A stretch of DNA of 64,000 nt from Octopus bimaculoides (GCF_001194135.2 NC_068991.1:52903580-52967579); one strand, 5' to 3'; shown: positions 4,195 to 57,665, numbered from the stretch's first letter. The notes: generated by a model from the sequence alone, not told the origin. Made by a program: numbers and translations.

Positions 4195-4635
4195 NNNNNN
4201 NNNNNNNNNNNNNNNNNNNNNNNNNNNNNNNNNNNNNNNNNNNNNNNNNNNNNNNNNNNNNNNNNNNNNNNNNNNNNNNNNNNNNNNNNNNNNNNNNNNN
4301 NNNNNNNNNNNNNNNNNNNNNNNNNNNNNNNNNNNNNNNNNNNNNNNNNNNNNNNNNNNNNNNNNNNNNNNNNNNNNNNNNNNNNNNNNNNNNNNNNNNN
4401 NNNNNNNNNNNNNNNNNNNNNNNNNNNNNNNNNNNNNNNNNNNNNNNNNNNNNNNNNNNNNNNNNNNNNNNNNNNNNNNNNNNNNNNNNNNNNNNNNNNN
4501 NNNNNNNNNNNNNNNNNNNNNNNNNNNNNNNNNNNNNNNNNNNNNNNNNNNNNNNNNNNNNNNNNNNNNNNNNNNNNNNNNNNNNNNNNNNNNNNNNNTT
4601 GTAAAGTTGAATATATATATATCTATATATATATA

Positions 4636-9231: not shown

Positions 9232-9554
9232 NNNNNNNNNNNNNNNNNNNNNNNNNNNNNNNNNNNNNNNNNNNNNNNNNNNNNNNNNNNNNNNNNNNNN
9301 NNNNNNNNNNNNNNNNNNNNNNNNNNNNNNNNNNNNNNNNNNNNNNNNNNNNNNTATATATATATATATATATATATATCATCATCATCATCGTTTAATG
9401 TCCGCTTTCCATGCTAGCATGGGTTGGACGATTTGACTGAGGACTGGTGAAACCAGATGGCTACACCAGGCTCCAATCTGATTTGGCAGGGTTTCTACAG
9501 ATATATATATATATATATATAACATGATTACACACACAGATATATTATCATCAT

Positions 9555-21790: not shown

Positions 21791-24700
21791 ACCCTGCTGT
21801 ACGAGCGACAATGAGATGATGTAAGGAATACGAGGTTAGGCTATCACTTGTAGATTATGTACATAGATATAATTAGGGAGAGGGTGTACGTTGAAATCTT
21901 TTTATCGTTATTCAGTTGATGTAGATTTTTTTTTTTTTGGTATGTATATGTAGAGGAGGGGAAGCGTGCCTTGTGCATGGAATGATCGTGGGACCAGAGG
22001 GACATATGATGTTATGAGATGAGATAGCAGGTGAGGTAAGGAAGAAGCAGGTGTCACCAGCGAGTGTCAATTGGATGAGCATTGAACTAGCGGGGGAATG
22101 TTCTCAACTTGTCGTAAAGCTGTTTTTATTCCTTTTGTGGTGTAACATGGTATCTCTATTTCCTACTGTTTGTAGTGACGTCATATGGCGCCAAAAAGGC
22201 ATAGTCGCCATTACTCCATCTTTAACCACGCATGCGTGGATTTCGACATCCAAGCGTTCCCGCTTCTATTCTCACTCTTACCACGCCAGACAGCGAACAA
22301 GCAAGACGGTCTAAAACAAGCTCTCATTGAGTGTGAAAGAAGGAAGTTGTCTCTCCAACGATTCATCTCTAGGGACAGTACATCTACATTCAGGCTATAT
22401 ATTTTCCACCATAAATAAATATTGTTGTTGATCAGTTTGGAGTTCTGCGTTCTGTTCACTTCTAATTTAATATAGGAAAGTCAGGTGTACATCTAATGAT
22501 GTATAACCCACTTTCCTAAATGTTAAAGTAAGAACGAATAGTTTTCCCCTTTGATCACCTAATACCCATCACAAAATCTTTGGCGGTAAAGTCGACATAA
22601 ATTCGACCCAAAATAGTAGCACAGAAGCAAAATCATTTTCATATCCTGAAGATGATATCAGCGACACCATTTTAGTAACTATTGTTCTCAGTAAATCAGG
22701 TACGTTTATGTAGGTGGTTGCTGTGTGTGATTATATGCCTAACATTCCCTTTCCTCTACTCTCACCGCTATCATATTCCCTCTGATATACATACCTCTCT
22801 CTTTCTCACTCTATAACACCTTTAAGTTCGTTAACGAGAAATGTTTTTGAGTACGGACATAAAAGCTCCTATGCTTTCATGTCAGCTACGGCCTAGCGAT
22901 TCCAACTTCCAACAACAGTTTTATGGGATCGTATCAAGCTGTGCCGATATAACGTAGAATAAATATAGTGATAATAATAATGATCCATGGATGGAATGTA
23001 TAAATATACTAGCTAACCTTGGGCCGTCAAAAATAACGGCTAATTGTAGTATTTTATATATGAATAAGGTACATAATAATCACACATACAAACATTCACA
23101 TTCTTCCCTTGTACATGCACACACATATACTCAAACAGAGTTGAAAGCAGTTTAACTTTTCTTTTCAGCGTTGAACATTCACCATCCCATTTCCATTGCA
23201 CACACACACACACACACACACATACTCACACACATTCACATACCTCCCTTTTACATACTCACACATATACTCACACTGAGTTGAAACGCTGATTTTTTTC
23301 ACCCCTTCCTTTCTCTATTACTATTACTTTCTCTCACTCTCTCTCAGTCAGGGCTATTACTCTCACTACTTCTCCTTCACTAAACTACTATTTTCTTCTC
23401 TCCCTTCACTGATACATTTTCCCCATTGTACGCCGGTTTGGTTATTTATAAAGATACCCGAAAAAAACCGCATACCTCGGTAACCCGTGGTCCGATTTTC
23501 GCAAAACTTGTTTTATTCCGTTTGTACTCACATGAGCATCCGATTCCTGATCTCTCCTGCTTCTGTCTCTTCCCCTCTGTCTCACCAGACTCTCAGCCCT
23601 TGCTTTATCAGTTTCATCGATCTTGGATAAATATTTCGTAAAGGACCCGTTCGTACNNNNNNNNNNNNNNNNNNNNNNNNNNNNNNNNNNNNNNNNNNNN
23701 NNNNNNNNNNNNNNNNNNNNNNNNNNNNNNNNNNNNNNNNNNNNNNNNNNNNNNNNNNNNNNNNNNNNNNNNNNNNNNNNNNNNNNNNNNNNNNNNNNNN
23801 NNNNNNNNNNNNNNNNNNNNNNNNNNNNNNNNNNNNNNNNNNNNNNNNNNNNNNNNNNNNNNNNNNNNNNNNNNNNNNNNNNNNNNNNNNNNNNNNNNNN
23901 NNNNNNNNNNNNNNNNNNNNNNNNNNNNNNNNNNNNNNNNNNNNNNNNNNNNNNNNNNNNNNNNNNNNNNNNNNNNNNNNNNNNNNNNNNNNNNNNNNNN
24001 NNNNNNNNNNNNNNNNNNNNNNNNNNNNNNNNNNNNNNNNNNNNNNNNNNNNNNNNNNNNNNNNNNNNNNNNNNNNNNNNNNNNNNNNNNNNNNNNNNNN
24101 NNNNNNNNNNNNNNNNNNNNNNNNNNNNNNNNNNNNNNNNNNNNNNNNNNNNNNNNNNNNNNNNNNNNNNNNNNNNNNNNNNNNNNNNNNNNNNNNNNNN
24201 ATCTTAAGTAATTGTTACGTGGTAGCAGGGTATGCTAGAAATAGCAGCCAAATCTTTGGAGGTGAGATACGTTGAACACACTTGAAAAAACCTATAGAAA
24301 AAAATTATTTCACACCGAGGTTACAAACGGGTCTTTTAAGAATATTTACTGTATTTTAAAAGTCATTTTCAATTAAAAATATTTTTTAAATATGCAAAAA
24401 AAAAAATGTTTATAATGGTATTCACTTGAAAATAATTTTTAAAAAATTAAAATATTGTCTGTTTAAAGAAAGCTAAAATATAAATACTTACTGTACAAAC
24501 AACTTACATTTTTGAAATCACATTCACTTTAAAATATTTCTAAATGATTAAAATACTGTGTTTAACAAAAGCGAAAATAGAAACATTTACTGTAAAAACA
24601 ACTCGTATTTTTTCGCTGGCAAGTTAAAGTCACTAAAAAACATCGCATCCATGACGTCAACACACATACAGAATACACACACATATAATGAATGTCATGG

Positions 24701-26353: not shown

Positions 26354-26851
26354 CTAAAAGGAATACCATTACAAAACATTTTTCGAGTGCATTCAACGTA
26401 TCGCAGCTCCAAAGATTTGGCTGCGATTTCTAGCATGCCCTGATCCCACGTATCAGCTACTTGCGATGAAGGACCCGAAATACCTGTTACATGGTAGCAG
26501 GGTGTACAAGAAATAGCAGCCAAATCCTTCCTTTTCTGGGGAAAGGAGCCGTTTACGCGTGATTTCGCTATTTCGGTGTCACATTCGCCGAAAGCATGTG
26601 AAATAACCCGGTAAAGGAAAAAACCCCACGAAATAAAACTCTGCTGGGAAACTCAGACTTTCCAGGTGCCCCAACGGGGTAGTCTAGTCTAGTCTAGTCT
26701 AGTATATATANNNNNNNNNNNNNNNNNNNNNNNNNNNNNNNNNNNNNNNNNNAAAGATTGCCTTAAGATACATAGCGTATTTTATTAATATGCCTGTTCA
26801 AGTATTATAGCATGAAACTATTAGTAGCTCTTTTGGTTGTGTATTGAATTT

Positions 26852-26906
<55 letters not shown>

Positions 26907-29479
26907 TATCCGAAATATATAGTATTATATATCCATCACAGCAGATCTTACCAATTGGCTAATCTTACCAATCGGAAATTGCGGAAAAAGATATTAATTC
27001 GCACATTCACACATTGCAAATATAATCTGTAGGTGGAACAGTAAAATTATTCAAAACTTTACTCAAATTTAAAATGTGACAGTTTTTGTTATCAGCATCC
27101 CAATGGTAGAGCATTGTATCTTTGTCAGAAACCAATTTCTTCCTTACAAGAGGATATCAAATAATTAAAAGTAAAAGATAACACACAAACACACACACGA
27201 ATGCATACATACATATACATTTGCATATGGTGGTTATTTCCTATAAAAAAATAAATAACAAGTTTCAAGGATACAGATAAACTCAAAAGGTTGATTTTTA
27301 TTGGATGTGTTTTGAGTGCAGCTGTCCACTCCTTTGAACTATAAAAATCAAGTTTGGAGGAGCATTGCAAACGACATCCATTTTCCAAGTTAATGACGGT
27401 CTAACCGGATATTATATTAGTTTTAAGAGAACTACCAACTTCCAAATGGCAGCAACCAATGGTGAAACTGAATTCACTAGTGTCTAGGAGACACGCCTAA
27501 AGAAAACGGAAGAGGATGTCAAAGAAGAGTTTTAGGAAAGAATCCATTCATGTATTTGACGCAACACATCCATCTTATCATTTAACGAAATAAAATTACA
27601 CAAGGAAACTATTGGAGCTCTCTTAACATTCTCTGAATAGCCTCGGTTTCTAACATTATGTAGAACGTGACGTTTGTCCAGGTTGAAAGTATCTTCTTTG
27701 TCAGTTAGGAAACTGATATTTTAAGACTAACTTTTTCACTCTCTCATCATTGCTATTGATTTAATTAAAGACTGCTTCAGCAATATTCCCATCCATATCA
27801 TAATAAAAGCCCCCCCACCCCGCTTACTGCTATAGTCTCTTGTGTATGCTTCAATATTTAGACCAAAACAATATCATCACACCTTTTAATACTGAGCTGC
27901 CTGCATAACAAAGATTATCTTCTTGAATTAATTCGTACTTCGATCTTATTACAACTTACAATCAACCAAATGGAATTATTGGTTGTTGATGGTACTTGTA
28001 ATTGACGAACTACCATCTATTTGATTGCAATTTTTTGGTTAAACCCGATGGAGATTATTAGTTAAGGTTAAACCTTTCCATGATTTAATTTGAAGATAGG
28101 CAGCAAGATGATAATATTAAGCTTTTAAACACGCGCACACGCGATTACATAGAAGGCTCTACAATCAATAATGGGAATTTCTAATGTAAGGGGGAAATCA
28201 TATGTATATATATATACATATGTATATATATATATANNNNNNNNNNNNNNNNNNNNNNNNNNNNNNNNNNNNNNNNNNNNNNNNNNNNNNNNNNNNNNNN
28301 NNNNNNNNNNNNNNNNNNNNNNNNNNNNNNNNNNNNNNNNNNNNNNNNNNNNNNNNNNNNNNNNNNNNNNNNNNNNNNNNNNNNNNNNNNNNNNNNNNNN
28401 NNNNNNNNNNNNNNNNNNNNNNNNNNNNNNNNNNNNNNNNNNNNNNNNNNNNNNNNNNNNNNNNNNNNNNNNNNNNNNNNNNNNNNNNNNNNNNNNNNNN
28501 NNNNNNNNNNNNNNNNNNNNNNNNNNNNNNNNNNNNNNNNNNNNNNNNNNNNNNNNNNNNNNNNNNNNNNNNNNNNNNNNNNNNNNNNNNNNNNNNNNNN
28601 NNNNNNNNNNNNNNNNNNNNNNNNNNNNNNNNNNNNNNNNNNNNNNNNNNNNNNNNNNNNNNNNNNNNNNNNNNNNNNNNNNNNNNNNNNNNNNNNNNNN
28701 NNNNNNNNNNNNNNNNNNNNNNNNNNNNNNNNNNNNNNNNNNNNNNNNNNNNNNNNNNNNNNNNNNNNNNNNNNNNNNNNNNNNNNNNNNNNNNNNNNNN
28801 NNNNNNNNNNNNNNNNNNNNNNNNNNNNNNNNNNNNNNNNNNNNNNNNNNNNNNNNNNNNNNNNNNNNNNNNNNNNNNNNNNNNNNNNNNNNNNNNNNNN
28901 NNNNNNNNNNNNNNNNNNNNNNNNNNNNNNNNNNNNNNNNNNNNNNNNNNNNNNNNNNNNNNNNNNNNNNNNNNNNNNNNNNNNNNNNNNNNNNNNNNNN
29001 NNNNNNNNNNNNNNNNNNNNNNNNNNNNNNNNNNNNNNNNNNNNNNNNNNNNNNNNNNNNNNNNNNNNNNNNNNNNNNNNNNNNNNNNNNNNNNNNNNNN
29101 NNNNNNNNNNNNNNNNNNNNNNNNNNNNNNNNNNNNNNNNNNNNNNNNNNNNNNNNNNNNNNNNNNNNNNNNNNNNNNNNNNNNNNNNNNNNNNNNNNNN
29201 NNNNNNNNNNNNATATATATATATATATATATATACACATACATATACGTACGTATATACGCACGTACATTAATACATATATACATACACATGCAGACAA
29301 ACATACATAAATACATACATACATACATGCATGCATGTGTTTGTGCGTCTGTGTGTGTCTGCGTGTGCGTTTGCGTGCGCTCTTGTATGTATATGTAATT
29401 GTTTTTACTAGTTTCAGCTCGAGAGCTGCAGCCATACTGGGGCACCGCCGTTAGCTTTGCTACGCTTTCTCTAACCTCC

Positions 29480-30190
29480 TCTGATATGTGGAATTTGGTG
29501 AATGAGTGAGTTTGATATTGCTGCTCTCATTTGAGTTTCTTATCGCGTGGTAGGTTCAACCGGAACTCTTGACTGGAGGAGATCCAGTTTTGCTTTGAAG
29601 ACACTTACATTCACCGCATGTAGGTCTCTCGGAATTTGTGGAAGAATATTCAAGGCGTGTGGGCCCTTGAAACCCAAGCTGTTGCAGTATCTGGTCCTGT
29701 AGCCTGATGGCAATATTGGGGATTTTGGTACTATGCAGTGGCGCCCCGTTCTGCTGTTCGTGTAACTTACAATGCAAAAGTTTGCTACAAGTTCTTGGAT
29801 TTTTCAGATGTGCATCACTCCAAATCTTTCCACTTTCGTTCTAGTGAGTAGAGTCTTAATTTTTTCTCCCATTAGCAGGTATGTTACATTGAGACGATCT
29901 TCTTCGTGTAGCTTCGAGTTCCGTTAACTTTACACTGTGATGACGATAGTTAGGAGCAGTAATCTAAACGGCTGAGGACAAGTGTCCTCCAGAAGACAAT
30001 CATGGTATCCTGTTCTCTCGTTCTGAATGTTCTAAGGATCCATCCGGCCAGCTGTCTGCATTTTATTGCCAACTTTCTAATATGCACCTGGAAAGATACA
30101 TCATTACTCATGTCAATGCCCAACTCGCACATTGATTTTGATTCAGAGATTGCAATCCTTCCTGGGGCAATTTATTTTGTCTGCTTCTCA
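29480..30190 (-). mobile_element. CR1-like LINE 3' remnant
   Basis: LGIDMS, GWILRTFRTRE, LVLSRLDYCS motifs. Confidence 0.8.
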
Positions 30191-31743
30191 TTGAACCTGC
30201 GTGATGGTGTGATGTGATGTGATGTGGTGTTGTGTGATATGGTGGTGTGTGGTGTGATGGTGTTGGGTGGTGGGGAGGTGAGAGTGGGGAAATCAAGGGT
30301 GGATCAGGCTGAGGGTGAAGGTAGAGATGGGGTATGTGGGTAGGCAGAGGGTGGGGTATATGGGAGTGGGTGTAAGGGATGGGAAGGTGGGTTTGGAATG
30401 TGTAGGGGTGGGTGGGGTTNNNNNNNNNNNNNNNNNNNNNNNNNNNNNNNNNNNNNNNNNNNNNNNNNNNNNNNNNNNNNNNNNNNNNNNNNNNNNNNNN
30501 NNNNNNNNNNNNNNNNNNNNNNNNNNNNNNNNNNNNNNNNNNNNNNNNNNNNNNNNNNNNNNNNNNNNNNNNNNNNNNNNNNNNNNNNNNNNNNNNNNNN
30601 NNNNNNNNNNNNNNNNNNNNNNNNNNNNNNNNNNNNNNNNNNNNNNNNNNNNNNNNNNNNNNNNNNNNNNNNNNNNNNNNNNNNNNNNNNNNNNNNNNNN
30701 NNNNNNNNNNNNNNNNNNNNNNNNNNNNNNNNNNNNNNNNNNNNNNNNNNNNNNNNNNNNNNNNNNNNNNNNNNNNNNNNNNNNNNNNNNNNNNNNNNNN
30801 NNNNNNNNNNNNNNNNNNNNNNNNNNNNNNNNNNNNNNNNNNNNNNNNNNNNNNNNNNNNNNNNNNNNNNNNNNNNNNNNNNNNNNNNNNNNNNNNNNNN
30901 NNNNNNNNNNNNNNNNNNNNNNNNNNNNNNNNNNNNNCCTTTTTATTTAAACGTGTCACACGGTCGAACACAAAATATTATATCAAAGATGATATACATA
31001 AAATATGTTATACTACGATAACATAGATGACCAGTAATGAAAGACCACAACCGTATAAGATGAATAACAGAGACATTTATTATGGCGTTAAAGATGTATG
31101 TGTATGTGAGAGTGTGAATGCGACATATAAGAACATAATCAAAGACAGGCCGTCGTACAAAGAAAAGTATGTATGTGAGTGATACATGTATGTGTATGTG
31201 AGTTATTACAGCAGATAGAAAGAGAGTCAATAACACGTGAGCATTTATACCAGTTCTTTGAATACACAATTGGAAGAGTCTGTATGTGAAAGGAGTTGAG
31301 GCTGTGTGTGAATACCCAATTATTAATACACAAGTGTTTTTTCATTGCATGGTAATTACACTACTGAATGTAATAAATGGAGGTTATTTTACCCTTTTTT
31401 TTGTTTTTATTTACATATATTTTTTATATGTATTTTTGCCTAATTTGTTGTTCATGTTATCGGTTATCCATTAACCAACCATAACAAAGTCATGGCCTTT
31501 CAAAACAATAGATGACCAATTAGATTACGGGACTGACCAAAACCCCCTCCCCACTTCCCGCAGGATTTCAGTTACACGATAAACAAAAAGTAACGGAAAA
31601 TAATAAAGTATCTTTATTAATACCCGGAAATTTATTACTTTTAGTATCGACTAATATCACAGGTATTAATATAAACTCTAACCCACTTATTGTGGACCGT
31701 TACCCCAAGCCCTCAATAGAAAACATATCGGATGTTTATATGC

Positions 31744-31775
<32 letters not shown>

Positions 31776-32204
31776 TTGTGTATAATTATTATAATTATAT
31801 AAAAAGAAAAATACGAACTACTACAGTAACCATCCCTTCTCAACACTGGAAATATGTATGTACCTATGGGTATGTATGTACGTAAATATACATATGTGTG
31901 TGTGTGTGTGTATGTGTATGTGTGTGTATGCATTCCTCATTTATATACCTTTTCATTCCTACATAACCTCAATAATCTTAAGATATATTGATTATTTAAA
32001 TTCCACTATTATTTCTCTTTTGATAATTTCACTTTCCTCTGTTTTTACTTTATCTAATAAGAATAATATAATACACCTAATAATAATAATAACTGGTTCC
32101 TTTGTATGCATATACATATAAATGTATAAATAAGTATTTATGTATATGTAAAAGTGTGTATATATGTATGTATTTATATCTATAACTTAACCTTATGAAC
32201 TTTC

Positions 32205-32331
32205 TAATCTCGCTGACGAAGCCCAGAGGCACTCTCAAGTACCTTAATCTTATCTACCAAATACTTCAGTTCACTGAAGGATGGAAGTAAAGTGGGGTAC
32301 TATGGCCTCTTGGTTGAAACAGCTGTAAGAT
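32205..32331 (+). ncRNA. Hammerhead-like motif with a long stem II
   Basis: CUGACGA at 32213, GAAAC at 32316, palindromic ACAGCUGU stem III with a GUA triplet. Stem II AGCCCAGAGGC/GCCUCUUGGUU plus AGUACC/GGUACU. Stem I imperfect. Confidence 0.55.
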
Positions 32332-33009
32332 ATTATTCTACTTTCTATGCTCTACGTTATATATTTTAATAATTACTTGTATTTTTATATTTTATATATT
32401 ATATATGTAAAGCATATGTTATACATGTATGTATATTATTATAATTTTTTTTTTAATAAATAAAGACGTAATATAATGTCTTAAAGTTGATGAATACCAC
32501 CTCTTGATCCCCTTCATTTTCTTATTGCTGTGTATATATATATATATATATTGCCTTTTGCTAAGTCCTTCATGTCAAGCACCGAGAGGCGGTTCTGCCC
32601 TGGGGATATAGAGGTAATTTTGGAGACGCTCACACACACTTTTTCTTTCTATCTGTACGTGTATATTTCTACATGTGCTGCGCGCCTGTTTACCTCGAGC
32701 GTCACAAAGAACTGTCGCTAAAGCAAGTTGAATGCTCTGTCATCCGCGCCAAATCAATAGCGCCCAAACAGCTGTGCATAATCAACTCATTCCGATCATC
32801 ATCAACTATTCCAAAGGCAAGACATGTTCAAGAGAAAAGAAAGTCTAAGGTACAAAAGGAATGGATCACGTAATAAAGTTACTGAAAGAGTCATAAATAT
32901 AACTAATTAAGAAAAGTATTAGCCAAGAAACCTAATTCAAATTTATGTCAGGACAGGATACCACCACAAAACACCTTTTTTGTGGCACATATACAAAAGT
33001 AGTACTAAC

Positions 33010-33430
33010 TACAAGGAAGCCTCTGTAGATAGCTTTCACTGACCACTTGGAAAAGGCTTTTGACAGAATTTCACGTTCTGAAGTGTGGTGGTTGCCAAGA
33101 AAACTGATTAAAAAAAAGTGACTTGTGAGAGTTGTACAACCAATGTACAAAGGAGCTGTTAGCAAGGCGAGAGTTCGGCGAATAATTTTATCGAGCAGAT
33201 TGGTGTATTTCAGATTTTAGCTCTCGATCTATTTGTTTATAATAGTCGTCATCGCCGCCGCCACCACCACCGTCGTCGTCATTGTCATCATCATTATCAT
33301 CGTCATCGTCATCATCACCATCAAGAAGTTTGAAACCGGTTTCCATGGGAATATTTGTACACAGATGCCATGGCTTTGATAGCTGAATCTGTAGATGTTG
33401 AGGGAAAATTCCGTGAAAGAGACAGAGTAC
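33010..33430 (+). mobile_element. RTE LINE RT remnant
   Basis: LEKAFDRISRSEVWW and VVQPMYKGAVSK motifs. Confidence 0.7.
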
Positions 33431-34039
33431 AAGTGTACCGAGACAAATTTGATGTAAGAAGAATCAGCAGCAGTGAACTGGAGAGAAGAGTACGCAGACC
33501 GTCTTCTCTGGTTATCTGATAAGGCCGTTTATCGAACAATGCCATCGCATTGGATCCGTCCGTGTTCAAATCCCCTTACAATCACTCGTTCAATATTGCT
33601 AACCATTACCGTCACTCTCAAACCATTACCCATTGTCATTGCTATCCATCACTCTATCTCAAATTTCTCTCTCTTTCTCACCGATCATTCACTTTCATCA
33701 TTTCCACTACTCCTATCACCTCTCTCTCTCTCTCTCTGTTTTTGCTCTATAACACTACAAAGAAAGCTATAATCCTCTGGTGCTGGAGAAGGAGCGAACG
33801 GAAATAGCATGAAGCAAACAGGACTCTTTAGTCTTGCTGGGGATGACAACTTCTTTAGTTTTACACTCTGTAAAACGATTGATAAGGAGAGCATCCGGCT
33901 ATAGAAACTTTGCCAAAAATGACATAGTCAACGACTCGTCTTGGAGGTCAGTAACTCAAAATAAGAACTGACCTGGAACGTGACGACCTACCCAAATCAT
34001 GACATCATGGAAAACTGAACGTAAATTGCTGCTGTTGAC

Positions 34040-34070
<31 letters not shown>

Positions 34071-34201
34071 GTGACAGACTGCCAAAATACTTCTTACTTC
34101 TTGCAAAAAATACCGTACTTTAATTCCAGGAAATCCCTTTTCTTTACAAACACACTTTGTTTACGTTTAGCTTGATGAAGTAGATCTATAATTAAAAGCT
34201 T

Positions 34202-34674
34202 GGCACTATCATGGTATTAGCTGTCAGAATTGAAAGTAGAACTGACAAGGAACGTTACTGCTGGTTTGAGTTGATTCTTTGGCTACTGACTAGCCGGAGC
34301 TATCTATCTGTCTGTCTATCTCACTATCTCTCTCTCTATATCTATCTATCTATCTATCTATCTATCACTCGTTCACCTCTGTGTCCGTAGAATTTATCAA
34401 ATTAGAAAACGCAAATTTAATATAAAAATATATTTTCTGAAATTGCAAATTATTTAAAATATAAAAATATAATTTTCAACAGAGAGAATTTATCAAAATA
34501 GAAAACAAATGAAGTTTGAAGTTTAAAAATAATAGGATCGACCACTCACGACTAGCTAGCGCGGACGCGCGACTGCGCGTTCGGGACCACTCTGCTTTAG
34601 TAGTACCCTTATACTCTGTGTGTTTTCAAACGCATGGATATAGGTGTCAAATTTGTTCCAATAACTTTCGAGTG

Positions 34675-34707
<33 letters not shown>

Positions 34708-34853
34708 CAGAGAGAGACAGACAGACAGATAGCTCGCTCCGGCCAGTCATGGTATTAGCTGTCAGTAGCCAAAGAATCAACTCAAACCAGCAGTAACGTT
34801 CCTTGTCAGATTTTTCTACTTTCACTTCTGACAGCTAATACCATGACAGTGCC
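34202..34853. mobile_element. Non-autonomous TIR element (MITE) with GGCAC termini and 8-bp TSD AAAAGCTT
   Basis: Arms of roughly 90-150 nt. AAAAGCTT at 34194-34201 and 34854-34861. Near-identical second copy at 57666-58080. Confidence 0.9.
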
Positions 34854-35152
34854 AAAAGCTTTCTAGTCCTGACCCTATATCCATCTTTTTTAAAACATAG
34901 TATAACTAGGACTACATTATCTAACGTTTCCTTCTTATTAATACAGCAATGTGTTGATCTGATGGAGAGCTAACAACTATATCTGCGAAGCACGCAACAA
35001 GATAGTCTTTTCTCGTTACTTCGTGTCACCGCCTCGTTTTCATTGCAGGTCAACTTGTGTTGATTTCACACTAACATGTCCTAATGCATCTTGATGCATT
35101 TTAATTTGTTCTGCTTGATATATCGAACATAGTTCGAGCTGTGTTTATCACA

Positions 35153-35350
35153 ATGTGCCTGAAAGTCTGTCTGTTGTGTTCCACTGGTTGGTTTTCATTG
35201 CTTCCACTATCCTGTTTACCACTTTTGCTATTTTATGGTCTCGCATGTGGTGTGGATACCATTCTTCGAATGTCACTCCTTTTGTCATTGGTCTGTGTCC
35301 TGGGGCATTATATTTCAATTAATTGGATTTTTCTTCAACCATTTGGAGAG
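35153..35350 (+). CDS. First coding exon of an Ice2/SERINC-superfamily multi-pass membrane protein
   Basis: ATG at 35153 opens MCLKVCLLCSTGWFSLLPLSCLPLLLFYGLACGVDTILRMSLLLSLVCVLGHYISINWIFLQPFGE and ends at a canonical GAG|GTATGT donor (phase 0). It resembles the yeast Ice2p N-terminus as I recall it (RICAACFYLLFTLLSIP...GGLECGL). Possible UTR acceptor TTTTCATTGCAG| at 35048. Other frames here are also largely open, so the frame rests on motif similarity and phase match. Confidence 0.7.
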
Positions 35351-38300
35351 GTATGTATTCGATGTTGCCCCGTCCTTACAATCCAGTTCTTAAATTATTA
35401 CTATCAAATTTAAGAACTTCAAAATTCCCCGCCAAGTTTATTGTTAACAACACTAACATTCCATAAAATTGTTCTTTCGTTATTATTGTATACTTTCATT
35501 CTTCAAAGCGTAATTGAAATATTGCCGGTTTCTTATTTATTAGTTGCTAATAATGTGCGATGGAAAAAAAATTAAAAAACAATCTTTACCGGAAAGATTA
35601 ACTTACGAATGAATAAGTGATTATTTTCGGAGATGAATCTGAAGTAGTGGGTTGGATACCAATCAGAAATTTATTAAAATATTGCCGCTGTGATTGATTA
35701 TTTTTAAAGTTAATATCTGACATTAAATATTCTTTAACTTAACTTTAACAATAAACATTAGTGATTTAAAAATAAGTAACCAACATGCGAAAGTATTCAG
35801 TAATGAAAGTACAATATATGATGAGAATGTAGTGTGCGATAGTGGCAAAAAAGCCAACGAATAAATTATTTTAGCCAAAGACCACAGTTTAAAAAACAAA
35901 AAAATACCGCAGCTCCATTCATGTTTACATAAAGAAAGTGGATTTTTATTTTATGTTTTCGATAAAAAGAAATTTGCTGACCCCCCACTTCTTAAACTGT
36001 GATATACTTCTGACAAATTTTGAACAATAAAATGATAAGCAGATATCTAGATATTGAAGGCTGTAAAACATATACTCGAAAAACATATTCAATTATTATT
36101 CCTCGACATGGTTGTGTAATAAAGTTCGGTTCCACTGCGTAATAATTCGGAGAAGCTTCTTCTTCATATATATATATATATAATACTATCCAATAATACT
36201 ATCCATATCACGTCCTCACTTTGTTGTTTTTTTGTTTTTTTGTTATTGTGTTTTTGAACTATATATATATATATATATATATATATNNNNNNNNNNNNNN
36301 NNNNNNNNNNNNNNNNNNNNNNNNNNNNNNNNNNNNNNNNNNNNNNNNNNNNNNNNNNNNNNNNNNNNNNNNNNNNNNNATATATGTATGTGTGTGTGTG
36401 TATGTATGTATGTGTATTTGTGTGTCTGTTTGTCCCCCCACCATCGCTTGACAACCGAAGCTGGTGTGTTTACGTCCCCGTAACTTAGCGGTTCGGCAAA
36501 AAGAGACCGATATAATAAGTACTAGGCTTATAAAGAATAAGTCCTGGGGTCGATTTTCTCGCCTAAAGGCTGTCCTCCAGCATGGCCGCAGTCAAATGAC
36601 TGAAACAAGTAAAAGAGATACCCCTGGTTAAATTACTTTGCTTTTATTGACCAGAGACAGAGTTAGTTAGCATAGGCGTAGTTGTGTGGTTAAGAAGTTT
36701 ACCTCCTAACCATGTGGTTTGGGGTTCAATCCTATTGCATGACACTGTGTTCTGTTATAGCCCTTGGCTGAATAAAGCTTTGTGAGTGGATTTGGAAGAC
36801 CAAAAGAAGTTTGTTGTGTGTGTGTGTATTTCTACAATATATATGTGTTGGTTGGCACTCCGTCGCTTACGACGTTGAGGGTTCCAGTTGATCCAATCAA
36901 CGGATTAGCCTGCTCGTGAAATTAACGTGCAAGTGGCTGAGCACTCCACAGACACGTGTACCCTTAACGTAGTTCTCGGGGATATTCAACGTGACACAGT
37001 GTGACAAAGCTGACCCTTTGAATTACAAGTACAACAGAAACAAAGAGTGAGAGAAAGTTGTGGTGAAAGAGTACAGCAGGGTTCACCACCATCCCCTGCC
37101 GGAGCCTCGTGGAGCTTTAGGTATTTTCGCTCAATAAACACTCACAACGCCCGGTCTGGGAATCGAAACCACGATCCTATGACCACGAGTCCATTGCGCC
37201 TCCACACAACATATATATACACACACACACACACACTCACATAAATATATATGTATATGGGGTAGTAGTGTCTGCATTTTCTTGTTTTGGCATGCAATAG
37301 TTGAGAGTGGCCCCAAGGAGAAATTTTTACCTTACTTAGACAGAAGTAAGGTTTGGTGACAGGTAGAGCTTCAACTATAGAAAATCTGCCTCGAGTTTTT
37401 GTTAATCCTATTGACCTCAGCTTACTTTCTAGTCAGTTACTTATGGATATTTATTTATTGAACTGCAAAGTAGCAGGGCATAAACACAGAAATGCTCTTT
37501 TTCAAGAGGTGTCAATGTAAAGACATGGAAACGTAGCCACACCTGTGGGGTTTAGGAGCTTGCTTTGCGACCATGTAGTTTTGGGTTCAGTCCCACTGCG
37601 CAGCATCTTGAGTAAGTACCTTGTATCATAGCCATAGGTTGACCAATGCCGTGAGTGAATTTGGTAGATGGAAACTATGTGAAAACCTGTCATATGTTTA
37701 AATATGTTTTGGTGTTTGTGTTTGTTCCCTCCACTGCTTGACCACTGATTGGTTTGTGTACATCCCTTTAACTTTGTGATTCAGCAAAACAAACTGATGG
37801 AGTAAGAACCAGACTTTAAAAAAATAAGTACTGAGTTCAATTTGTTTGACTAAACCCTTCATGTGGGTGCCCCAGCATGGCTGCAGTCTTATGACTGAAA
37901 CAAATAAAAGATAGAAGATATACATAAATACACATTCATCTGTACACACACACACAATTTTGACATAGTTTTACTTCTCTGATAAGATGACTGGAATATT
38001 TAGGCATAAAATTCTTAATTTTGGTGAGATATTTGTGCTATGTTTAAGACTTAGGAGTAATATTATTAACTCTACTATTGCAGTGACCTGGCAGAATTGT
38101 TAGCATTCTGAGTAAAATGCTTAGTGGCATTTTGTCTGTCTTTACATTCTGAGTTCAAATTTCGTCAGGACCAACTTTACCTTTCATCCTTTTGGAGTTG
38201 ATAAAATAAGTACCAGTTGAGTACTGGAGTGGATGTAATCAACCAGCCTCTTCCCTCAAAATTGCTGGCCTTGTGCCAAAATTTGAAACCAATATTATTA

Positions 38301-39438
38301 ATTCTACTAACATAACTGATATACCAATACAGTAGATAGTTTTCAGACAATGTACCAATAGAATAGTGAAGGCGCATGGCTTAATAATGAAGGTATTCAG
38401 CTCACAATTGTAAGGTCATGAGTTCAATTTCCGCTGACGTATTGTGTCCTTGAGCAAGACACTGCATTCCACATTGCTCCAGTCCACTCAGCTGGCAAAA
38501 ATGAGTAGTACTTGTATTTTAAAGGGCCAACCTTGTCACACTCTGTGTCATGCTAAATCTCCCTGAGAACTACATTAAGAGTATACATATCTGTGGAGAG
38601 CTCAGCCACTTGCACGTTAATTTCACAAGTAGGCTGTTCCATTGATCAGATCAACCGAAACCCTTGTCGTAACCAACAGGCTGCCACCAATAGAATATAC
38701 ACTAAAATACGGTAGACAGCTTTTAGAAAATCCAGGTATAACTTATTTCTAATGATGAATACTGCCTAAAATAATTTTTAAAATTTGATAAATACAATAA
38801 ACATTTTCATTACTAAATTAGCATTTGGAAGATAAATCAACAACAAATTCTTACAGTAAATTATAATGGAATGTTTTAATTTAGACATGCTTTAAAACAA
38901 ACAGCATTGTATGATAGAATCAGAGGAAGATAGATAGCAAAATGATGAATCGATGAATACATTTAAACTTGTTTTGTTGTAAAGAATGTTCTTTATTGTC
39001 CAGACTTGCCCAAGAATACTTTTCATTTATTTCATTTTTGTATTGTGGTTTGCAAGATTCTTGATGTGATCCCATGTGTTGAAATATATTTTGTTGTATC
39101 TCGAGAAGGTCATTATGCCAATAATAAACACATGCACTGGTTGGATGTATAGTAAGAAGTTTGATTCCAAACTGCATGGTTCTGGGTTCAATCCTACGTT
39201 GGGCAAGTGACTTCTACTGTAGCCTTGAGTCAATCAAAACTTTATGAGTGGATTTGGTTGACATAAACTGAAAGAGGTTCATTGTATGTGTGTGTTTTGC
39301 CTTCAGAATCACTTCTGGTGGTCCAGCATGGTCACAGTCTAATGACTGAAACAAGTAAAAGATAAAAGATAATTACCATTTAACTAATTAACTAATCGAT
39401 TGTTTGATTATTTATCATTTAATCAATCAATCATTTAG

Positions 39439-39502
39439 GTTTGTCAAAGTCCTTTTATTGCCATTTGCAAACCTCATCAATGGCATGCTCTCGTTACTCC
39501 AG
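39439..39502 (+). other. Candidate 64-nt internal exon of the Ice2-like gene (FVKVLLLPFANLINGMLSLLQ)
   Basis: ACTAAT branch-like motifs about 45 nt upstream, acceptor TCATTTAG|, donor CAG|GTCAAT. Ends in phase 0 matching 39776, but starts in phase 2, which does not match the 35350 donor in the main frame. Confidence 0.35.
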
Positions 39503-39775
39503 GTCAATTTCTCATGTAGAGCCTCAAACAGATGTTACTCTATTGGAAATAAAACTACTACAATTTTTAAAATTAACTCAAATATGTTTGAGTATATTTG
39601 GTGGTTTTACTTTGTAATGGAAGTAAACTGTAACTTGGGTTCATGAACTATCTTATAACTACTAAAATAATATAAAATGTAATGCTTAGCTATGTTAATT
39701 AAGACATAGTTATTTATTGTTGTAAGATACCTGTTTTCCAGTTATTTATATATTTATTGTTGTTTTCTTATTTAG

Positions 39776-40711
39776 GTTGGATTATTTATTCTGCTGTGGG
39801 CTCTCCCTGTGAAACTCGTCCCTTATTCAGTGGTATATGTCTATGGCTTTGTGCTGCAGGTATTTGAACCTATCATGTTATTCCAAGAAGTTCTCTTTGT
39901 TCTTCTCCTAGCAACACAACTTTCCAATTACATAAATGATTTGGCTGAAGAAGATGATGATGATAACCTGTACATATATCAAATTATATTTGCTATATTT
40001 TCTATTCTAAACTATGGTTTATCCTGTTATATTGTGTTAATATCTTTTAACAGCAACACCTGGCTTCTTTATGTGATATTATTTCTAACAGTCTTCAACC
40101 ATGTTCTCATGTGGTCATTAGGAACTGGACAGATGTGGGAAACTGCTTTTACTTTCATGTTGACCATGTTTATACTTTTACTCATGAACATAGAGAACAA
40201 CTTAACTGAAAATATAGAATTACCTGTTCTATCCTGTTTTGATTCTAAACACACTTTGATAGAATTTGTGAGCAGTGTTTGGCTACTAAACTCTGAGAAA
40301 CTATCCAACTTTCTAAAGTTGATTGGTAGTTTTTTAAGTCCTATTTTTGTTGGCACTATTTTCCTCCGGCTCTTTTCTGTCAATTGCTTCAATTATCAGA
40401 AAACTGTTTCAATGTTTTTTGAAAACGAAGACAAAGATGATGATGTTTTATTAGAAGAAAGTAGTCCGTCCATTTTAAGTTGCTCAGGTTTACAACCAAC
40501 TCTTGTTTGTAAATTGGGCACAGTTTTTGTTGTTACACAACTTATGATTAGACAATTTTATCTTTTTATTGGAAATGGCTTAATTACTCAGCAAGAATGG
40601 ATAAAAAATTGGTTGCCTGATAATATATTAATTGGAAGAGTAACTCAGATGTTTTTGGTGAATATTTTCTTTCAGCATTCAATTTACAGACGATGGTCAG
40701 ATAATTCTTAA
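39776..40711 (+). CDS. Large terminal coding exon of the Ice2/SERINC-superfamily protein (311 aa + stop)
   Basis: Acceptor TTTTCTTATTTAG| at 39775, phase 0, in frame with track ORF 39809-40711. Several hydrophobic helices. Motifs YGFVLQVFEPIMLFQEVLFVLL (Ice2 WQFVLTKSTPFFTLSEGFFTIL), acidic loop then LNYGLSCYIVL (SERINC LNYLLSLVAIV), LGTGQMWETAFTF (Ice2 SQKGSVIESSLFF), FLSPIFVGTIFLRL (Ice2 VSPAIVINLCFRV). Longest clean non-repeat ORF in the window. Confidence 0.88.
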   Translation, partial: VGLFILLWALPVKLVPYSVVYVYGFVLQVFEPIMLFQEVLFVLLLATQLSNYINDLAEEDDDDNLYIYQIIFAIFSILNYGLSCYIVLISFNSNTWLLYVILFLTVFNHVLMWSLGTGQMWETAFTFMLTMFILLLMNIENNLTENIELPVLSCFDSKHTLIEFVSSVWLLNSEKLSNFLKLIGSFLSPIFVGTIFLRLFSVNCFNYQKTVSMFFENEDKDDDVLLEESSPSILSCSGLQPTLVCKLGTVFVVTQLMIRQFYLFIGNGLITQQEWIKNWLPDNILIGRVTQMFLVNIFFQHSIYRRWSDNS

Positions 40712-44334: not shown

Positions 44335-45315
44335 AAAATTCATTAAAATGACAGATCTATTGGACTTTCAAAGAGGTCAAATTGTTGGTGCTTGTATGAC
44401 AGGCACTAGCGTAACAAAAACACCCGAAATGTTTGGTGTATCAAGAACTACTGTCTCGAAAGTAATGACAGCCTTTGAGAAAGAAGGGGAAAAAACCTCC
44501 TCGAAACAAAACTCCGGAAGAAAACCAAAACTTTCAGACAGGGACTGTCGGACTCTTACGAGAATTGTTAGAAAGAATCACAAAATTACTGCAGAGCTTA
44601 ATAATCACCTTGAGAACCCAATTTCNNNNNNNNNNNNNNNNNNNNNNNNNNNNNNNNNNNNNNNNNNNNNNNNNNNNNNNNNNNNNNNNNNNNNNNNNNN
44701 NNNNNNNNNNNNNNNNNNNNNNNNNNNNNNNNNNNNNNNNNNNNNNNNNNNNNNNNNNNNNNNNNNNNNNNNNNNNNNNNNNNNNNNNNNNNNNNNNNNN
44801 NNNNNNNNNNNNNNNNNNNNNNNNNNNNNNNNNNNNNNNNNNNNNNNNNNNNNNNNNNNNNNNNNNNNNNNNNNNNNNNNNNNNNNNNNNNNNNNNNNNN
44901 NNNNNNNNNNNNNNNNNNNNNNNNNNNNNNNNNNNNNTGTATCTTGGAAATCCGCCGGCCCAATGGTTTCCCTTCATGGCAGAATTAATAGTCAGGACTA
45001 TTTAAGCATTTTATCTGATCAAATTCATCCTATGGTGCGGAAACGCAGTCTTTCAGTATGATAATGCACTAACTCCCACAGCTAAAATTGTTACTGAATG
45101 GCATGAGGAACAGTCTAGTGAAGTTGAACATCTTATCTGGCCACCACAGTCCCCAGATCTTGGTGCATTTTAGAAAAACAAGTAAGGAGTCGATATCATC
45201 CACCATCATCACTACAAGAACTGGACACTGTTTTAGCTGAAGAATGGACAAAAATTCCTTTGGAAACAATTCAAACTTTGTACGAATCTTGAACTCAGAA
45301 TGCAAGGGACTGGAG
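44335..45315 (+). mobile_element. Tc1/mariner transposase pseudogene spanning a gap
   Basis: FQRGQIVGA, SGRKPKL, YLSILSDQIHP, WPPQSPDL, EEWTKIPLETIQTL with frameshifts. Confidence 0.88.
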
Positions 45316-55090: not shown

Positions 55091-55899
55091 TCTTCTTCGA
55101 TCCTCATAGCTTCTTCCCCCATGGAAAGCCCTGTTTTAAACAATACACAAGTAGCTTGCTATAAATGTTACATTATACAGTATAAATATAAATTCGCTTG
55201 AATATACCATTCGTATGTTGAATGCAACGACATAGAAAGAAATTATTGAACTTTACAGAGTTTGTACTTCTGAGAAGATTGCCAATATTAATTGTACAAC
55301 GTACCATTTTCAAATTTCCTAAGCATTTGCCACCAGTATTTATTAGCTTTCAGAAAAATGCATTATGTATCTATTTATTACATAAGTTTAATATAGAACT
55401 ACTTTGATTTGTAAATTAACCTTACGACCATCATGACAGAAGAGCACTGGTCAAAGCCGCTCCCCATCGTATACCAGTACAATATTTCCTTTATCTAAAA
55501 TTATCATTGCAATTTAAAACCCTTACTACCATAATAATATTTGTTTTGTGAAAAACTTCCTCCCTTCCCCCGTCTTTTTTTTTTTTGCCAAAAACTCACC
55601 TTTTCGGTTACGGAGATTCCAGAAAATTGCCAAAAATTGGAATTTTGAAATTTGTTGCCCCCCCCCTNNNNNNNNNNNNNNNNNNNNNNNNNNNNNNNNN
55701 NNNNNNNNNNNNNNNNNNNNNNNNNNNNNNNNNNNNNNNNNNNNNNNNNNNNNNNNNNNNNNNNNNNNNNNNNNNNNNNNNNNNNNNNNNNNNNNNNNNN
55801 NNNNNNNNNNNNNNNNNNNNNNNNNNNNNNNNNNNNNNNNNNNNNNNNNNNNNNNNNNNNNNNNNNNNNNNACCAAAACACCACCCCTAGTAGAAAAAG

Positions 55900-56145: not shown

Positions 56146-57665
56146 GCCTTGTTTATTTTGCTGGAATCCTATCAATATTGTTATCATTTTTTAAAAATGT
56201 TTGCGAAGCTGTAAAAAAATGTTCATGCTTGAGAAAGCGAAACGTTACTTTACACAATACGACAAAGTATAGTGGTGAACTATTAAGGCTGTTTCATCAT
56301 TAATTGTGAAATGTTTACGTTGTTACATCAGTTCTCAATACCGGATATAACCATGTGACGTCGAAAAAAAATTTCAGACCGCTCTAATTTGTTTCCAGTA
56401 ACTCATCTCCTTCAACTACAACAATAATAATATACTATCACAATTAATAATTTCTACTAGATGTATGAAAAATTTTACAATCTACTCCTTTTTAATTAGA
56501 AATTAGCCGAAGATGGTCTTTATCGTTGTTTACATCATATTATTTAACTTTGGGGAGACTGAAGCTGATTGTTTACTTCCGTGTCCAAAATATCACAATG
56601 TAAGTACTTTAACTCTTTTAATTCATTGTTACAATCCTATTCTTTATTATTAAACTACTTTAATAATTAAATTAATCAACTAGTTAAATTATTAGGTGGA
56701 ATAACAAATATATGTTTAATAGAAAGTCATTGTTTTGAAGAAGGAAGTATGTATATTTTGTGATTTTCACCTTTTTCACACTTATTGTGGAACAATATCA
56801 TTTCAAAATCGAATCTAATCGTTTCTTCTGATAATTATTGTTTATGAAGTGTTTTACGAACAAGGAAAATACGCAAGCCATTCTTTTTCTTAGGTTATTA
56901 ACTACTCGAAAGTTAAATTAAGAAAGGTTTGAACTAATGGCGTAAGCAGTCAACAGGTTTCATATTCAGTTACAATGATCATTTTAAGCAGCTTTCCGAG
57001 TAGTGTGTGTGTGTATCAGTGTGAATGAGTTTATTTCCGACTTCTTTTTGCCCAAAATTTCTTCGGATTTGTATGTTTCAATATATATGATTTTGCCCCA
57101 AAATCACGTTTTCAAAATTTTAATTTCTCAGTTCCCCATCCTAATTTCGTAATTTTTAACTTTTTTTCGAATTGTTTTTTTGGTAGAGATGGACTATATG
57201 TAATCTGAACCTTTCCCCCGCCTTATTTATTATTATTTTTTTTTACGGAATCCGACGTTTTAGGCTATGGAGATTCCGATTCTGAAAAAAAAAATTTTTT
57301 TAAATTTCAATTCCCCCCCCCCACCAAGCAGGCTATTTACATGCTAGAAATAACAGCNNNNNNNNNNNNNNNNNNNNNNNNNNNNNNNNNNNNNNNNNNN
57401 NNNNNNNNNNNNNNNNNNNNNNNNNNNNNNNNNNNNNNNNNNNNNNNNNNNNNNNNNNNNNNNNNNNNNNNNNNNNNNNNNNNNNNNNNNNNNNNNNNNN
57501 NNNNNNNNNNNNNNNNNNNNNNNNNNNNNNNNNNNNNNNNNNNNNNNNNNNNNNNNNNNNNNNNNNNNNNNNNNNNNNNNNNNNNNNNNNNNNNNNNNNN
57601 NNNNNNNNNNNNNNNNNNNNNNNNNNNNNNNNNNNNNNNNNNNNNNNNNNNNNNNNNNNNNNNNN

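What the first reader, a model, noticed from the sequence alone, without database searches (positions are those of the whole stretch)
35153..40711. Cephalopod homologue of fungal Ice2p (SERINC superfamily)
Seen: a phase-0 join of 35153-35350 to 39776-40711 gives about 377 aa that is hydrophobic throughout. From memory it matches yeast Ice2p in order along its length (K-V-C..C...FSLL, G-L-x-C-G, FVL...P....E..F, G.G...E...F, SP.+V...R) and also has a SERINC-like acidic loop followed by LNYGLS. Established: Ice2 is studied as a fungal ER protein linked to ER membrane biogenesis and Nem1-Spo7/Pah1 (lipin) control, and is structurally related to SERINCs. Inference: this invertebrate keeps an Ice2-like branch with no characterised animal function, perhaps an ER lipid regulator or scramblase. 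It may belong to an already noticed invertebrate Ice2/SERINC-intermediate group, so novelty must be checked.
Basis: partly seen in the sequence, partly recalled or inferred. Interest (0 to 1): 0.75.

Follow-up and report, generated by a model that had tools for sequence, protein, structure and literature searches.

The report
Octopus Ice2-like/SERINC-superfamily membrane protein gene
This is a real, already annotated two-exon octopus gene for a ten-helix membrane protein that belongs to an invertebrate family published in 2021 as lying between fungal Ice2 and SERINC, so it is a correct call but not a new discovery, and its function is still untested.

Summary
Joining 35153-35350 to 39776-40711 (GT/AG, phase 0) gives a 377-aa protein identical to RefSeq XP_014775941.1, "uncharacterized protein LOC106873208 isoform X1" of Octopus bimaculoides. 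The N gap (36287-36379) lies inside the intron and does not touch the reading frame. Three other cephalopods have gap-free proteins across the junction, and two octopods keep the intron at the same codon.

The protein belongs to a small invertebrate family. Four of my hits carry accessions listed in Alli-Balogun & Levine (2021) as their "intermediate ICE2-like family". Their octopus entry (XP_029642825.1) is a paralog of this gene (31% identity), about 3.35 Mb away.

Three independent tests point weakly but consistently to SERINC:
- Family consensus against Pfam Serinc: E 3.5e-5, 23.3 bits (cut-off 24).
- hhalign against SERINC3 and fly SERINC: P 3.3e-4; controls score 22.5 or less against 37.9.
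- AlphaFold model (pLDDT 78): the only credible PDB match is human SERINC3 (probability 0.99, TM 0.44-0.51).

Pfam ICE2 is never hit. Verdict: a new member (a second cephalopod paralog) of a known, uncharacterised family. SERINC-superfamily membership is supported, direct Ice2 orthology was not shown here, and the function is inferred only. Interest is low to moderate.

The parts
35153..35350 (+). Coding exon 1 of LOC106873208 isoform X1 (codons 1-66: Met-Cys N-terminus and roughly the first three predicted TM helices)
   Evidence: ATG at 35153, GTATGT donor at 35351. Exact match to XP_014775941.1. tblastn 100% identity.
35351..39775 (+). Intron (4,425 nt, phase 0) holding the assembly gap 36287-36379, which is flanked by AT and TG microsatellites
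   Evidence: The intron is at the same codon in O. sinensis and Argonauta.
39776..40711 (+). Coding exon 2 (codons 67-377 plus the TAA stop): the end of predicted helix 3 and helices 4-10, with both acidic loops
   Evidence: TTTAG acceptor before 39776 and stop at 40709-40711. tblastn 100% identity.
29772..29843 (+). Alternative first coding exon (24 codons) of the predicted isoform X2 (XP_052827766.1, 335 aa). It replaces residues 1-66 and so removes the first two to three TM helices.
   Evidence: BLASTP of X1 against X2. tblastn hit at 29772-29849. ATG at 29772 and GTGAGT donor at 29844. The called gene span of 10,940 bp equals 29772-40711.
39947..39964 (+). Acidic loop 1 (EEDDDD, residues 124-129) between predicted helices 4 and 5. 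The E/D run is conserved across the family.
   Evidence: Alignments. hhalign places it on the SERINC3 'MEEGN' loop. Coordinates.
40424..40492 (+). Acidic, low-confidence (pLDDT<50) loop 2 (residues 283-305) between predicted helices 8 and 9. This is the position of the long loop after TMH8 in SERINCs.
   Evidence: AF2 model: segment 283-305 has pLDDT<50. An acidic run is present in all family members. A long loop after TMH8 in SERINC is mentioned in the 2021 paper's figure legend.
40193..40195 (+). Codon of Glu206, invariant in all 36 aligned family members, at the end of predicted helix 7
40367..40369 (+). Codon of Arg264, invariant in the 36-sequence alignment, within predicted helix 8

Best explanation
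Window 35153-40711 holds the two coding exons of Octopus bimaculoides LOC106873208. The gene encodes a 377-aa integral membrane protein with about ten transmembrane helices.

It is a member of the invertebrate 'intermediate ICE2-like' family of the SERINC superfamily described by Alli-Balogun & Levine in 2021. More precisely, it is the less diverged of two cephalopod paralogs. The other paralog, not this one, is the one in their list.

Shown here: the gene model, family membership, conservation and a SERINC-like fold.

Inferred: the protein works as SERINCs are thought to. That is, it is an endomembrane protein whose helical bundles, joined by long tilted helices (here 83-125 and 255-284), expose a lipid-facing groove that binds or flips phospholipids. 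By homology to SERINC topology, its two acidic loops (124-129 and 283-305) would face the cytosol and serve as regulatory or sorting elements. Whether it also restrains the lipin phosphatase complex as yeast Ice2 does is open.
For: - Gene model: exact identity to XP_014775941.1, and GT/AG splice sites.
- Conserved intron position and dN/dS of about 0.10 against Argonauta.
- An intron-less 1.6-kb contig encodes the full ORF in another cephalopod.
- Family: the cephalopod profile finds 31 representatives among 1.84 billion proteins. All named ones are uncharacterised proteins of molluscs, annelids, brachiopods, echinoderms, hemichordates, amphioxus or corals.
- Direct BLASTP to paper-listed members: Mizuhopecten E 3.9e-30 over residues 17-375, the octopus paralog XP_029642825.1 E 7e-42, Acanthaster 5e-13, Capitella 4e-11. 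The published list was read.
- SERINC link, test 1: the family consensus hits Pfam Serinc as top family at E 3.5e-5 and 23.3 bits. Five reversed or shuffled controls give no hit.
- SERINC link, test 2: hhalign against SERINC3 plus Drosophila TMS1d gives P 3.3e-4 over 171 columns. Reversed and 20 shuffled controls score 22.5 or less, against 37.9 for the real alignment.
- SERINC link, test 3: the AF2 model has pLDDT 77.8 and pTM 0.74. Its only credible PDB match is 7RU6_A human SERINC3, with probability 0.99, TM 0.44/0.51 and 403 columns. All other hits have TM of 0.19 or less.
Against: - Each SERINC test is individually sub-threshold: Pfam 23.3 bits against a 24-bit cut-off, and only with a consensus, never with the real protein; hhalign probability 38%; Foldseek E 0.15 with rmsd 8.5 A.
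- One of the three consensus sequences (deuterostome plus coral) gave no Serinc hit.
- The profile of 26 members found no PDB sequence at E<=10.
- No functional, localisation or octopus expression data exist.
- dN/dS between O. bimaculoides and O. sinensis is 0.54, based on few changes.
- The helix arrangement and loop orientation are read from DSSP strings and by analogy. Model coordinates could not be inspected.
Confidence: 0.85

Rival explanations
1. It is a functional animal counterpart of yeast Ice2. It would be an ER membrane protein that binds and inhibits the CTDNEP1-NEP1R1 (Nem1-Spo7) phosphatase complex, keeping lipin phosphorylated and inactive and so favouring phospholipid synthesis and ER membrane growth.
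For: The 2021 study reports that the invertebrate family shares a branch with Ice2 and that PSI-BLAST from it reaches Ice2 at iteration 2, before it reaches SERINCs. Ice2's role as inhibitor of Nem1-Spo7 is established in yeast, and that complex and lipin are conserved in animals.
Against: Pfam ICE2 gave no hit at E<=10 for the protein, 35 relatives or three consensus sequences, whereas Serinc was the top hit. The part of Ice2 that contacts Nem1-Spo7 is not mapped, so no motif could be tested. The family is absent from the vertebrates that retain CTDNEP1-NEP1R1, so it cannot be a general regulator. Papagiannidis et al. name SERINCs, not this family, as candidate orthologs and call that untested.
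Confidence: 0.15
2. It is simply a divergent canonical SERINC (Pfam Serinc family member) of octopus.
For: Serinc is the best Pfam family for the family consensus, and SERINC3 is the best structural match.
Against: The real protein and all 35 relatives fail the Serinc model; the best single-member E-value is 0.13, in 1 of 26. The protein is 377 aa, against 472 and 464 matched residues in SERINC3 and fly SERINC. The strongly conserved SERINC motifs seen between human and fly (for example DFAHS, SGLLQSS, MMTLTNWY) are absent. The 2021 analysis places the family on a separate branch.
Confidence: 0.04
3. The SERINC resemblance is convergent, or an artefact of hydrophobic composition. On this view the family is an unrelated ten-helix membrane protein family of unknown fold class.
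For: All three SERINC signals are below conventional significance. Helical membrane proteins are prone to spurious low-level matches.
Against: Three methods with different inputs pick the same family, and the two sequence-based matches fall in the same region (family positions ~43-273 against the SERINC core). Reversed and shuffled controls do not reproduce the signal. Foldseek's next-best hits are far worse (TM of 0.19 or less). Published iterated searches link the families independently.
Confidence: 0.06
4. The open reading frame is a decaying pseudogene or an annotation artefact rather than a working gene.
For: dN/dS is 0.54 between O. bimaculoides and O. sinensis. No assembled O. bimaculoides transcript contig carrying the exact protein was found. 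The gene is nested in another gene's intron.
Against: The ORF is intact and full length in four octopod species and in a more distant cephalopod, with dN/dS of about 0.10 to Argonauta and conserved splice sites. The related cephalopod's protein cluster is seen on more than 100 short contigs that look like transcripts. Family-wide invariant residues (E206, R264) are retained.
Confidence: 0.03

Closest known systems
'Intermediate ICE2-like family' of Alli-Balogun & Levine 2021 (Proteins 89:1240; bioRxiv 10.1101/2021.01.08.425964), e.g. Mizuhopecten XP_021373130.1, Acanthaster XP_022104596.1, Capitella ELT98757.1, 'Octopus vulgaris' (now O. sinensis) XP_029642825.1
   Same: Full-length pairwise similarity (E 3.9e-30 to the scallop protein, 7e-42 to the octopus entry); similar length (about 340-400 aa); no Pfam domain; invertebrate distribution; about ten predicted helices; an acidic run after helix 4 and another after helix 8.
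   Different: The window's gene is not the octopus gene in the published list. It is a second cephalopod paralog (31% identity), about 3.35 Mb away on the same chromosome. It is the copy closer to other molluscs (106-112 bits against 57-69 bits).
SERINC proteins (Pfam PF03348; structures 7RU6 human SERINC3, 6SP2 Drosophila TMS1d)
   Same: Best and only credible structural match (probability 0.99, TM 0.44-0.51 over the whole length). Co-linear profile match over the central helices, including the acidic loop followed by a Y-x-LS helix. Ten helices with a long loop after helix 8.
   Different: About 10-15% identity. Native sequences do not reach the Serinc HMM threshold. The protein is about 90-100 residues shorter and lacks the hallmark SERINC motifs conserved from fly to human. 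No evidence bears on serine incorporation, scrambling or antiviral activity.
Fungal Ice2 (Pfam PF08426; S. cerevisiae Ice2p, inhibitor of Nem1-Spo7)
   Same: According to the 2021 paper, it shares a branch with the invertebrate family and has ten TM helices.
   Different: No detectable match to the Pfam ICE2 model here. Yeast Ice2p is 491 aa with two inserts that the paper removed for its alignment (residues 96-137 and 274-371) and calls budding-yeast-specific. Function is known only for the fungal protein.

Membership tests
Intermediate ICE2-like family (Alli-Balogun & Levine 2021) | Mutual detectability by sequence search with the listed members (the authors' own criterion: all sequences identify each other) | tested here: met
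   The cephalopod profile hits listed accessions: XP_021373130.1 at E 1.9e-37, XP_022104596.1 at 2.5e-17, ELT98757.1 at 1.7e-14, and the cluster holding XP_022780854.1 at 2.6e-11. Pairwise BLASTP E-values run from 3.9e-30 to 4e-11, and 7e-42 to the listed octopus paralog. The list was read.
Intermediate ICE2-like family (Alli-Balogun & Levine 2021) | No previously known domain (no Pfam family above threshold) | tested here: met
   There were 0 Pfam families at E<=10 for the protein and only noise for 35 relatives. Precomputed Pfam columns were empty.
Intermediate ICE2-like family (Alli-Balogun & Levine 2021) | Profiles of the family reach Ice2 and then SERINC on iteration | tested here: inconclusive
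   SERINC was reached weakly. Ice2 was not reached.
SERINC superfamily (fold level) | Ten-helix fold superposable on solved SERINC structures | tested here: met
   The AF2 model has pLDDT 77.8 and about ten long helices. Foldseek's top hit is 7RU6_A with probability 0.99, TM 0.44/0.51 and 403 columns; the next hit has TM 0.19. The E-value of 0.15 means the match is remote.
SERINC superfamily (fold level) | Co-linear profile-profile similarity to SERINC above controls | tested here: met
   hhalign gives P 3.3e-4 and score 37.9 over 171 columns, at probability 38%. The reversed control scores 14.9 and 20 shuffles score 22.5 or less. The SERINC profile had only two sequences.
Pfam Serinc (PF03348) | Score at or above the gathering threshold (24 bits) for the protein | tested here: not met
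   The native protein gives no hit. The best native relative scores E 0.13. The consensus scores 23.3 bits.
Pfam ICE2 (PF08426) / fungal Ice2 | Match to the ICE2 profile | tested here: not met
   There was no ICE2 hit at E<=10 for the protein, 35 relatives or 3 consensus sequences. HMMER's filters may hide hits above about E 0.1.
   No Ice2 sequence could be retrieved.
Pfam ICE2 (PF08426) / fungal Ice2 | Binding and inhibition of the Nem1-Spo7 / CTDNEP1-NEP1R1 phosphatase complex; ER localisation | not testable with these tools
   This needs experiments. The yeast data are in PMC8591542.

The most novel reading that the evidence does not exclude
The invertebrate Ice2-like family, including this octopus gene, is the missing animal counterpart of yeast Ice2. 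It would be a membrane-embedded brake on the CTDNEP1-NEP1R1 lipin phosphatase complex that tunes ER membrane production. Vertebrates would have lost it, and cephalopods duplicated it, possibly in connection with their very membrane-rich tissues.
Probability: 0.12. Interest if true: 0.6.

Novelty: new member of a known kind. Interest (0 to 1): 0.25.

Why it matters
The practical value is modest. An "uncharacterized protein" in octopus genomes can now be labelled as an Ice2-like/SERINC-superfamily member. Cephalopods turn out to carry two paralogs, only one of which was in the published family list.

The family itself is an unexplored animal branch of a superfamily that includes HIV restriction factors (SERINC3/5) and a yeast regulator of ER membrane biogenesis (Ice2). 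Any functional assay on it would show which activity is ancestral: lipid binding or scrambling, or control of the lipin phosphatase. But the family's existence and its relationships were published in 2021, so the finding confirms existing knowledge and extends it only by the second paralog.

Tried and rejected
- Direct hmmscan of the protein against Pfam at E<=10 and phmmer against PDB sequences found nothing useful.
- A profile of 26 members against PDB sequences gave 0 hits.
- The first AlphaFold run, with six cephalopod sequences, gave pLDDT 38 and was discarded.
They returned only 6-7 proteins and no ICE2- or Serinc-annotated borderline hits. A true iterated search towards Ice2 was therefore not possible.
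- I looked for the paralog in the window. It is absent; it only cross-matches exon 2 at 31% identity.
- I looked for an O. bimaculoides transcript contig encoding the exact protein. Only the genome record was found.
The probe was not used in any test.
- I decided not to type yeast Ice2p from memory, because no tool could then have replaced it with a verified sequence.
- The pseudogene, canonical-SERINC and composition-artefact readings were considered and judged unlikely (see the rival explanations).


Full report

Yes, to the base. Window 35153-35350 begins with ATG and is followed by GTATGT. Window 39776-40711 is preceded by TTTAG and ends in TAA. The phase-0 join gives 377 aa with GRAVY +0.77. 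An exact-sequence look-up shows this is XP_014775941.1, [quoted passage not shown]. So the window is O. bimaculoides chromosome CM046611.1, near 52.9 Mb.

The scan program's warning about the N run at 36287-36379 is answered as follows:
- The gap lies in the 4,425-nt intron, between AT and TG microsatellites, so it cannot affect the frame.
- No exon is hidden in it. The O. vulgaris and O. sinensis (377 aa) and Argonauta hians (372 aa) proteins, and a 379-aa protein from another cephalopod, all align through the junction without a gap.
- That last protein is encoded by an uninterrupted ORF on a 1,621-nt contig assembled from a sequencing run. This looks like a transcript.
- In O. sinensis and Argonauta the intron sits after the same codon 66, with the same GTATGT donor (introns of 4,612 and 1,238 nt).
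- dN/dS is about 0.10 between Octopus and Argonauta (dS is near saturation, so this is rough). It is 0.54 between the two Octopus species, from few substitutions.

RefSeq also predicts an isoform X2 (335 aa). Its alternative first coding exon is at 29772-29843 (GTGAGT donor) and it would lack residues 1-66. The called gene span of 10,940 bp equals 29772-40711.

**2. What family is it?**

The native protein matches no Pfam family at E<=10 and no PDB sequence. A profile of the cephalopod orthologs, searched exhaustively against 1.84 billion representatives, finds only 31 proteins at E<=1e-3, mostly 340-395 aa. Every one that carries a name is an "uncharacterized" or "hypothetical" protein. They come from:
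- molluscs (Physella, Mizuhopecten, Argopecten, Pecten, Babylonia, Bulinus; later Mytilus and Gigantopelta);
- annelids (Capitella, Owenia) and a brachiopod (Lingula);
- echinoderms (Acanthaster, Antedon, Holothuria; later Patiria and Asterias);
- hemichordates (Ptychodera, Glandiceps), amphioxus, and corals (Stylophora, Montipora).

No vertebrate protein appeared.

**3. Is it already known?**

Yes, as a family. [quoted passage not shown] It links Ice2 and SERINCs in iterated searches.

Their Supplementary Table 4 lists Acanthaster XP_022104596.1, Capitella ELT98757.1, Mizuhopecten XP_021373130.1 and Stylophora XP_022780854.1. The first three carry the same accessions as my hits P0014, P0018 and P0007. 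The fourth, P0056, is a member of the cluster of my hit P0022. Pairwise BLASTP of the window's protein gives E 3.9e-30 over residues 17-375 to the scallop entry, 5e-13 to Acanthaster and 4e-11 to Capitella.

The table also lists "Octopus vulgaris XP_029642825.1". That accession is LOC115217313 of O. sinensis (400 aa, P0051). It is not the ortholog of the window's gene, which is LOC115217570, XP_029643170.1. The two octopus proteins are 31% identical (E 7e-42).

In O. bimaculoides the second gene (LOC106874476) lies at 49.58 Mb of the same chromosome, about 3.35 Mb from the window's gene. It is not in the window. In an unbootstrapped NJ tree the two cephalopod lineages are sisters, which suggests a cephalopod duplication. 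The window's copy is the one closer to other molluscs (106-112 bits against 57-69 bits).

A text search found no later paper that characterises the animal family.

**4. Independent tests of the SERINC/Ice2 relationship**

(a) Pfam.
- None of 36 native family members reaches ICE2 or Serinc. One of 26 touches Serinc at E 0.13, among noise.
- HMM consensus sequences do better. The non-cephalopod consensus has Serinc as its top family at E 3.5e-5 and 23.3 bits (cut-off 24), with residues 88-273 on model positions 141-319 of 434. The whole-family consensus gives E 9.3e-4. A deuterostome-plus-coral consensus gives nothing.
- Two reversed and three window-shuffled consensus controls give no Serinc hit and nothing below E 0.5.
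- ICE2 never appears.

(b) Profile-profile comparison.
- I obtained real human SERINC3 and Drosophila TMS1d sequences from the PDB alignments and aligned them.
- hhalign of the 36-sequence family alignment against them gives P 3.3e-4, score 37.9 and probability 38% over 171 columns (family 43-218, SERINC3 93-290).
- The alignment puts the family's acidic loop and the following "..SILNYGLS" helix on SERINC3 "[24 protein letters not shown]", and "EGIISDAAF" on "SGLLQSSLIT".
- The reversed control scores 14.9, and 20 column shuffles score at most 22.5.

(c) Structure.
- With six sequences AlphaFold failed (pLDDT 38).
- With 36 sequences it gave pLDDT 77.8 and pTM 0.74. The long helices are at about 14-32, 34-57, 59-75, 83-125, 128-156, 161-181, 186-209, 255-284, 309-331 and 352-376. 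The acidic segment 283-305 is disordered.
- Foldseek against 350,542 PDB chains returns human SERINC3 (7RU6_A) first, with probability 0.99, TM 0.44 (query) / 0.51 (target), 403 alignment columns and E 0.15. Every other hit has TM of 0.19 or less and probability of 0.12 or less.

Each of the three signals is weak, but they come from different methods and agree. The two sequence-based matches also fall in the same central region. Together with the published iterated searches, I regard SERINC-superfamily membership as well supported. A specific Ice2 relationship is supported only by the literature.

**5. How it probably works**

Shown: it is a conserved, intact, ten-helix membrane protein with a SERINC-like fold. 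It has two acidic loops, after helices 4 and 8, and family-invariant Glu206 and Arg264. Gly33, Ser41, Pro82, Tyr89, Glu104, Gly184, Phe317, Gln321 and Gln357 are nearly invariant.

Inferred: as in SERINCs, the helices pack into subdomains bridged by long tilted helices and expose a lipid-facing cleft. That arrangement and the scramblase reports for SERINC3/5 are from my own knowledge of the SERINC structural papers; the scramblase-like activity of SERINC5 is also mentioned in the abstract listed. By homology with SERINC topology the two acidic loops would be cytosolic. I therefore favour a lipid-binding or lipid-flipping endomembrane protein. An Ice2-type role as inhibitor of the lipin phosphatase complex is possible but has no direct support here.

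**6. Verdict**

The family was published in 2021 and the gene is annotated in RefSeq. What this analysis adds:
- The window's gene is a second cephalopod paralog, not the one listed in the paper.
- It is the less diverged copy.
- The SERINC-like fold can be recovered independently.
- Native sequences match neither Pfam model.

Interest is low to moderate.

Noticed in passing
window 29772-40711 (whole gene) and beyond; L001, L004, L005: The gene lies inside a longer minus-strand gene whose 227-aa product hits Pfam PF15002 (ERK-JNK_inhib). The same nesting is seen in O. sinensis, and in Argonauta the two genes are adjacent. I did not locate the host gene's exons in the window.
   Followed up: partly
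window 29772-29843 (+): Alternative first coding exon of the predicted isoform X2 (335 aa). It would remove residues 1-66, including the conserved Met-Cys N-terminus and the first two to three TM helices, so it may be a minor or non-functional transcript.
   Followed up: partly
window 44348-45061 (+): An ORF interrupted by the N gap 44626-44937. Its N-terminus gives sub-threshold helix-turn-helix hits (HTH_28 E 8.7e-5, plus HTH_29 and HTH_32). My reading is a Tc1/mariner-type transposase remnant.
   Followed up: partly
window 29950-30132 (-): A 60-aa ORF (..RKLAIKCRQLAGWILRTF..LSRLDYCS) that from memory resembles the C-terminal tail of LINE-type reverse transcriptases. It has no Pfam hit at E<=0.01.
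   Followed up: partly
window 4195-4598, 9232-9354, 23657-24200, 26711-26752, 28237-29212, 30420-30937, 36287-36379, 44626-44937, 55668-55871, 57358-57665: There are ten assembly gaps in the 64-kb window. The one in the finding is flanked by (AT)n and (TG/TA)n microsatellites.
   Followed up: yes
L003 3001-3681 (O. bimaculoides CM046611.1, about 49.58 Mb): The paralog LOC106874476 is annotated in O. bimaculoides as a single-exon product of only 226 aa. Its O. sinensis counterpart is 400 aa, so the O. bimaculoides model is probably truncated at the 5' end.
   Followed up: no
window 35153-35158 (codons 1-2) and alignments A3/A4: Nearly all family members, from corals to cephalopods, start with Met-Cys, often followed by further cysteines. 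This recalls the cysteine-rich N-terminus of SERINCs and suggests possible lipid modification.
   Followed up: no
CDS 35153-35350 + 39776-40711 compared with L004: dN/dS between O. bimaculoides and O. sinensis is 0.54 (dN 0.025, dS 0.046), against about 0.10 to Argonauta. This may be sampling noise or recent relaxation of constraint.
   Followed up: partly
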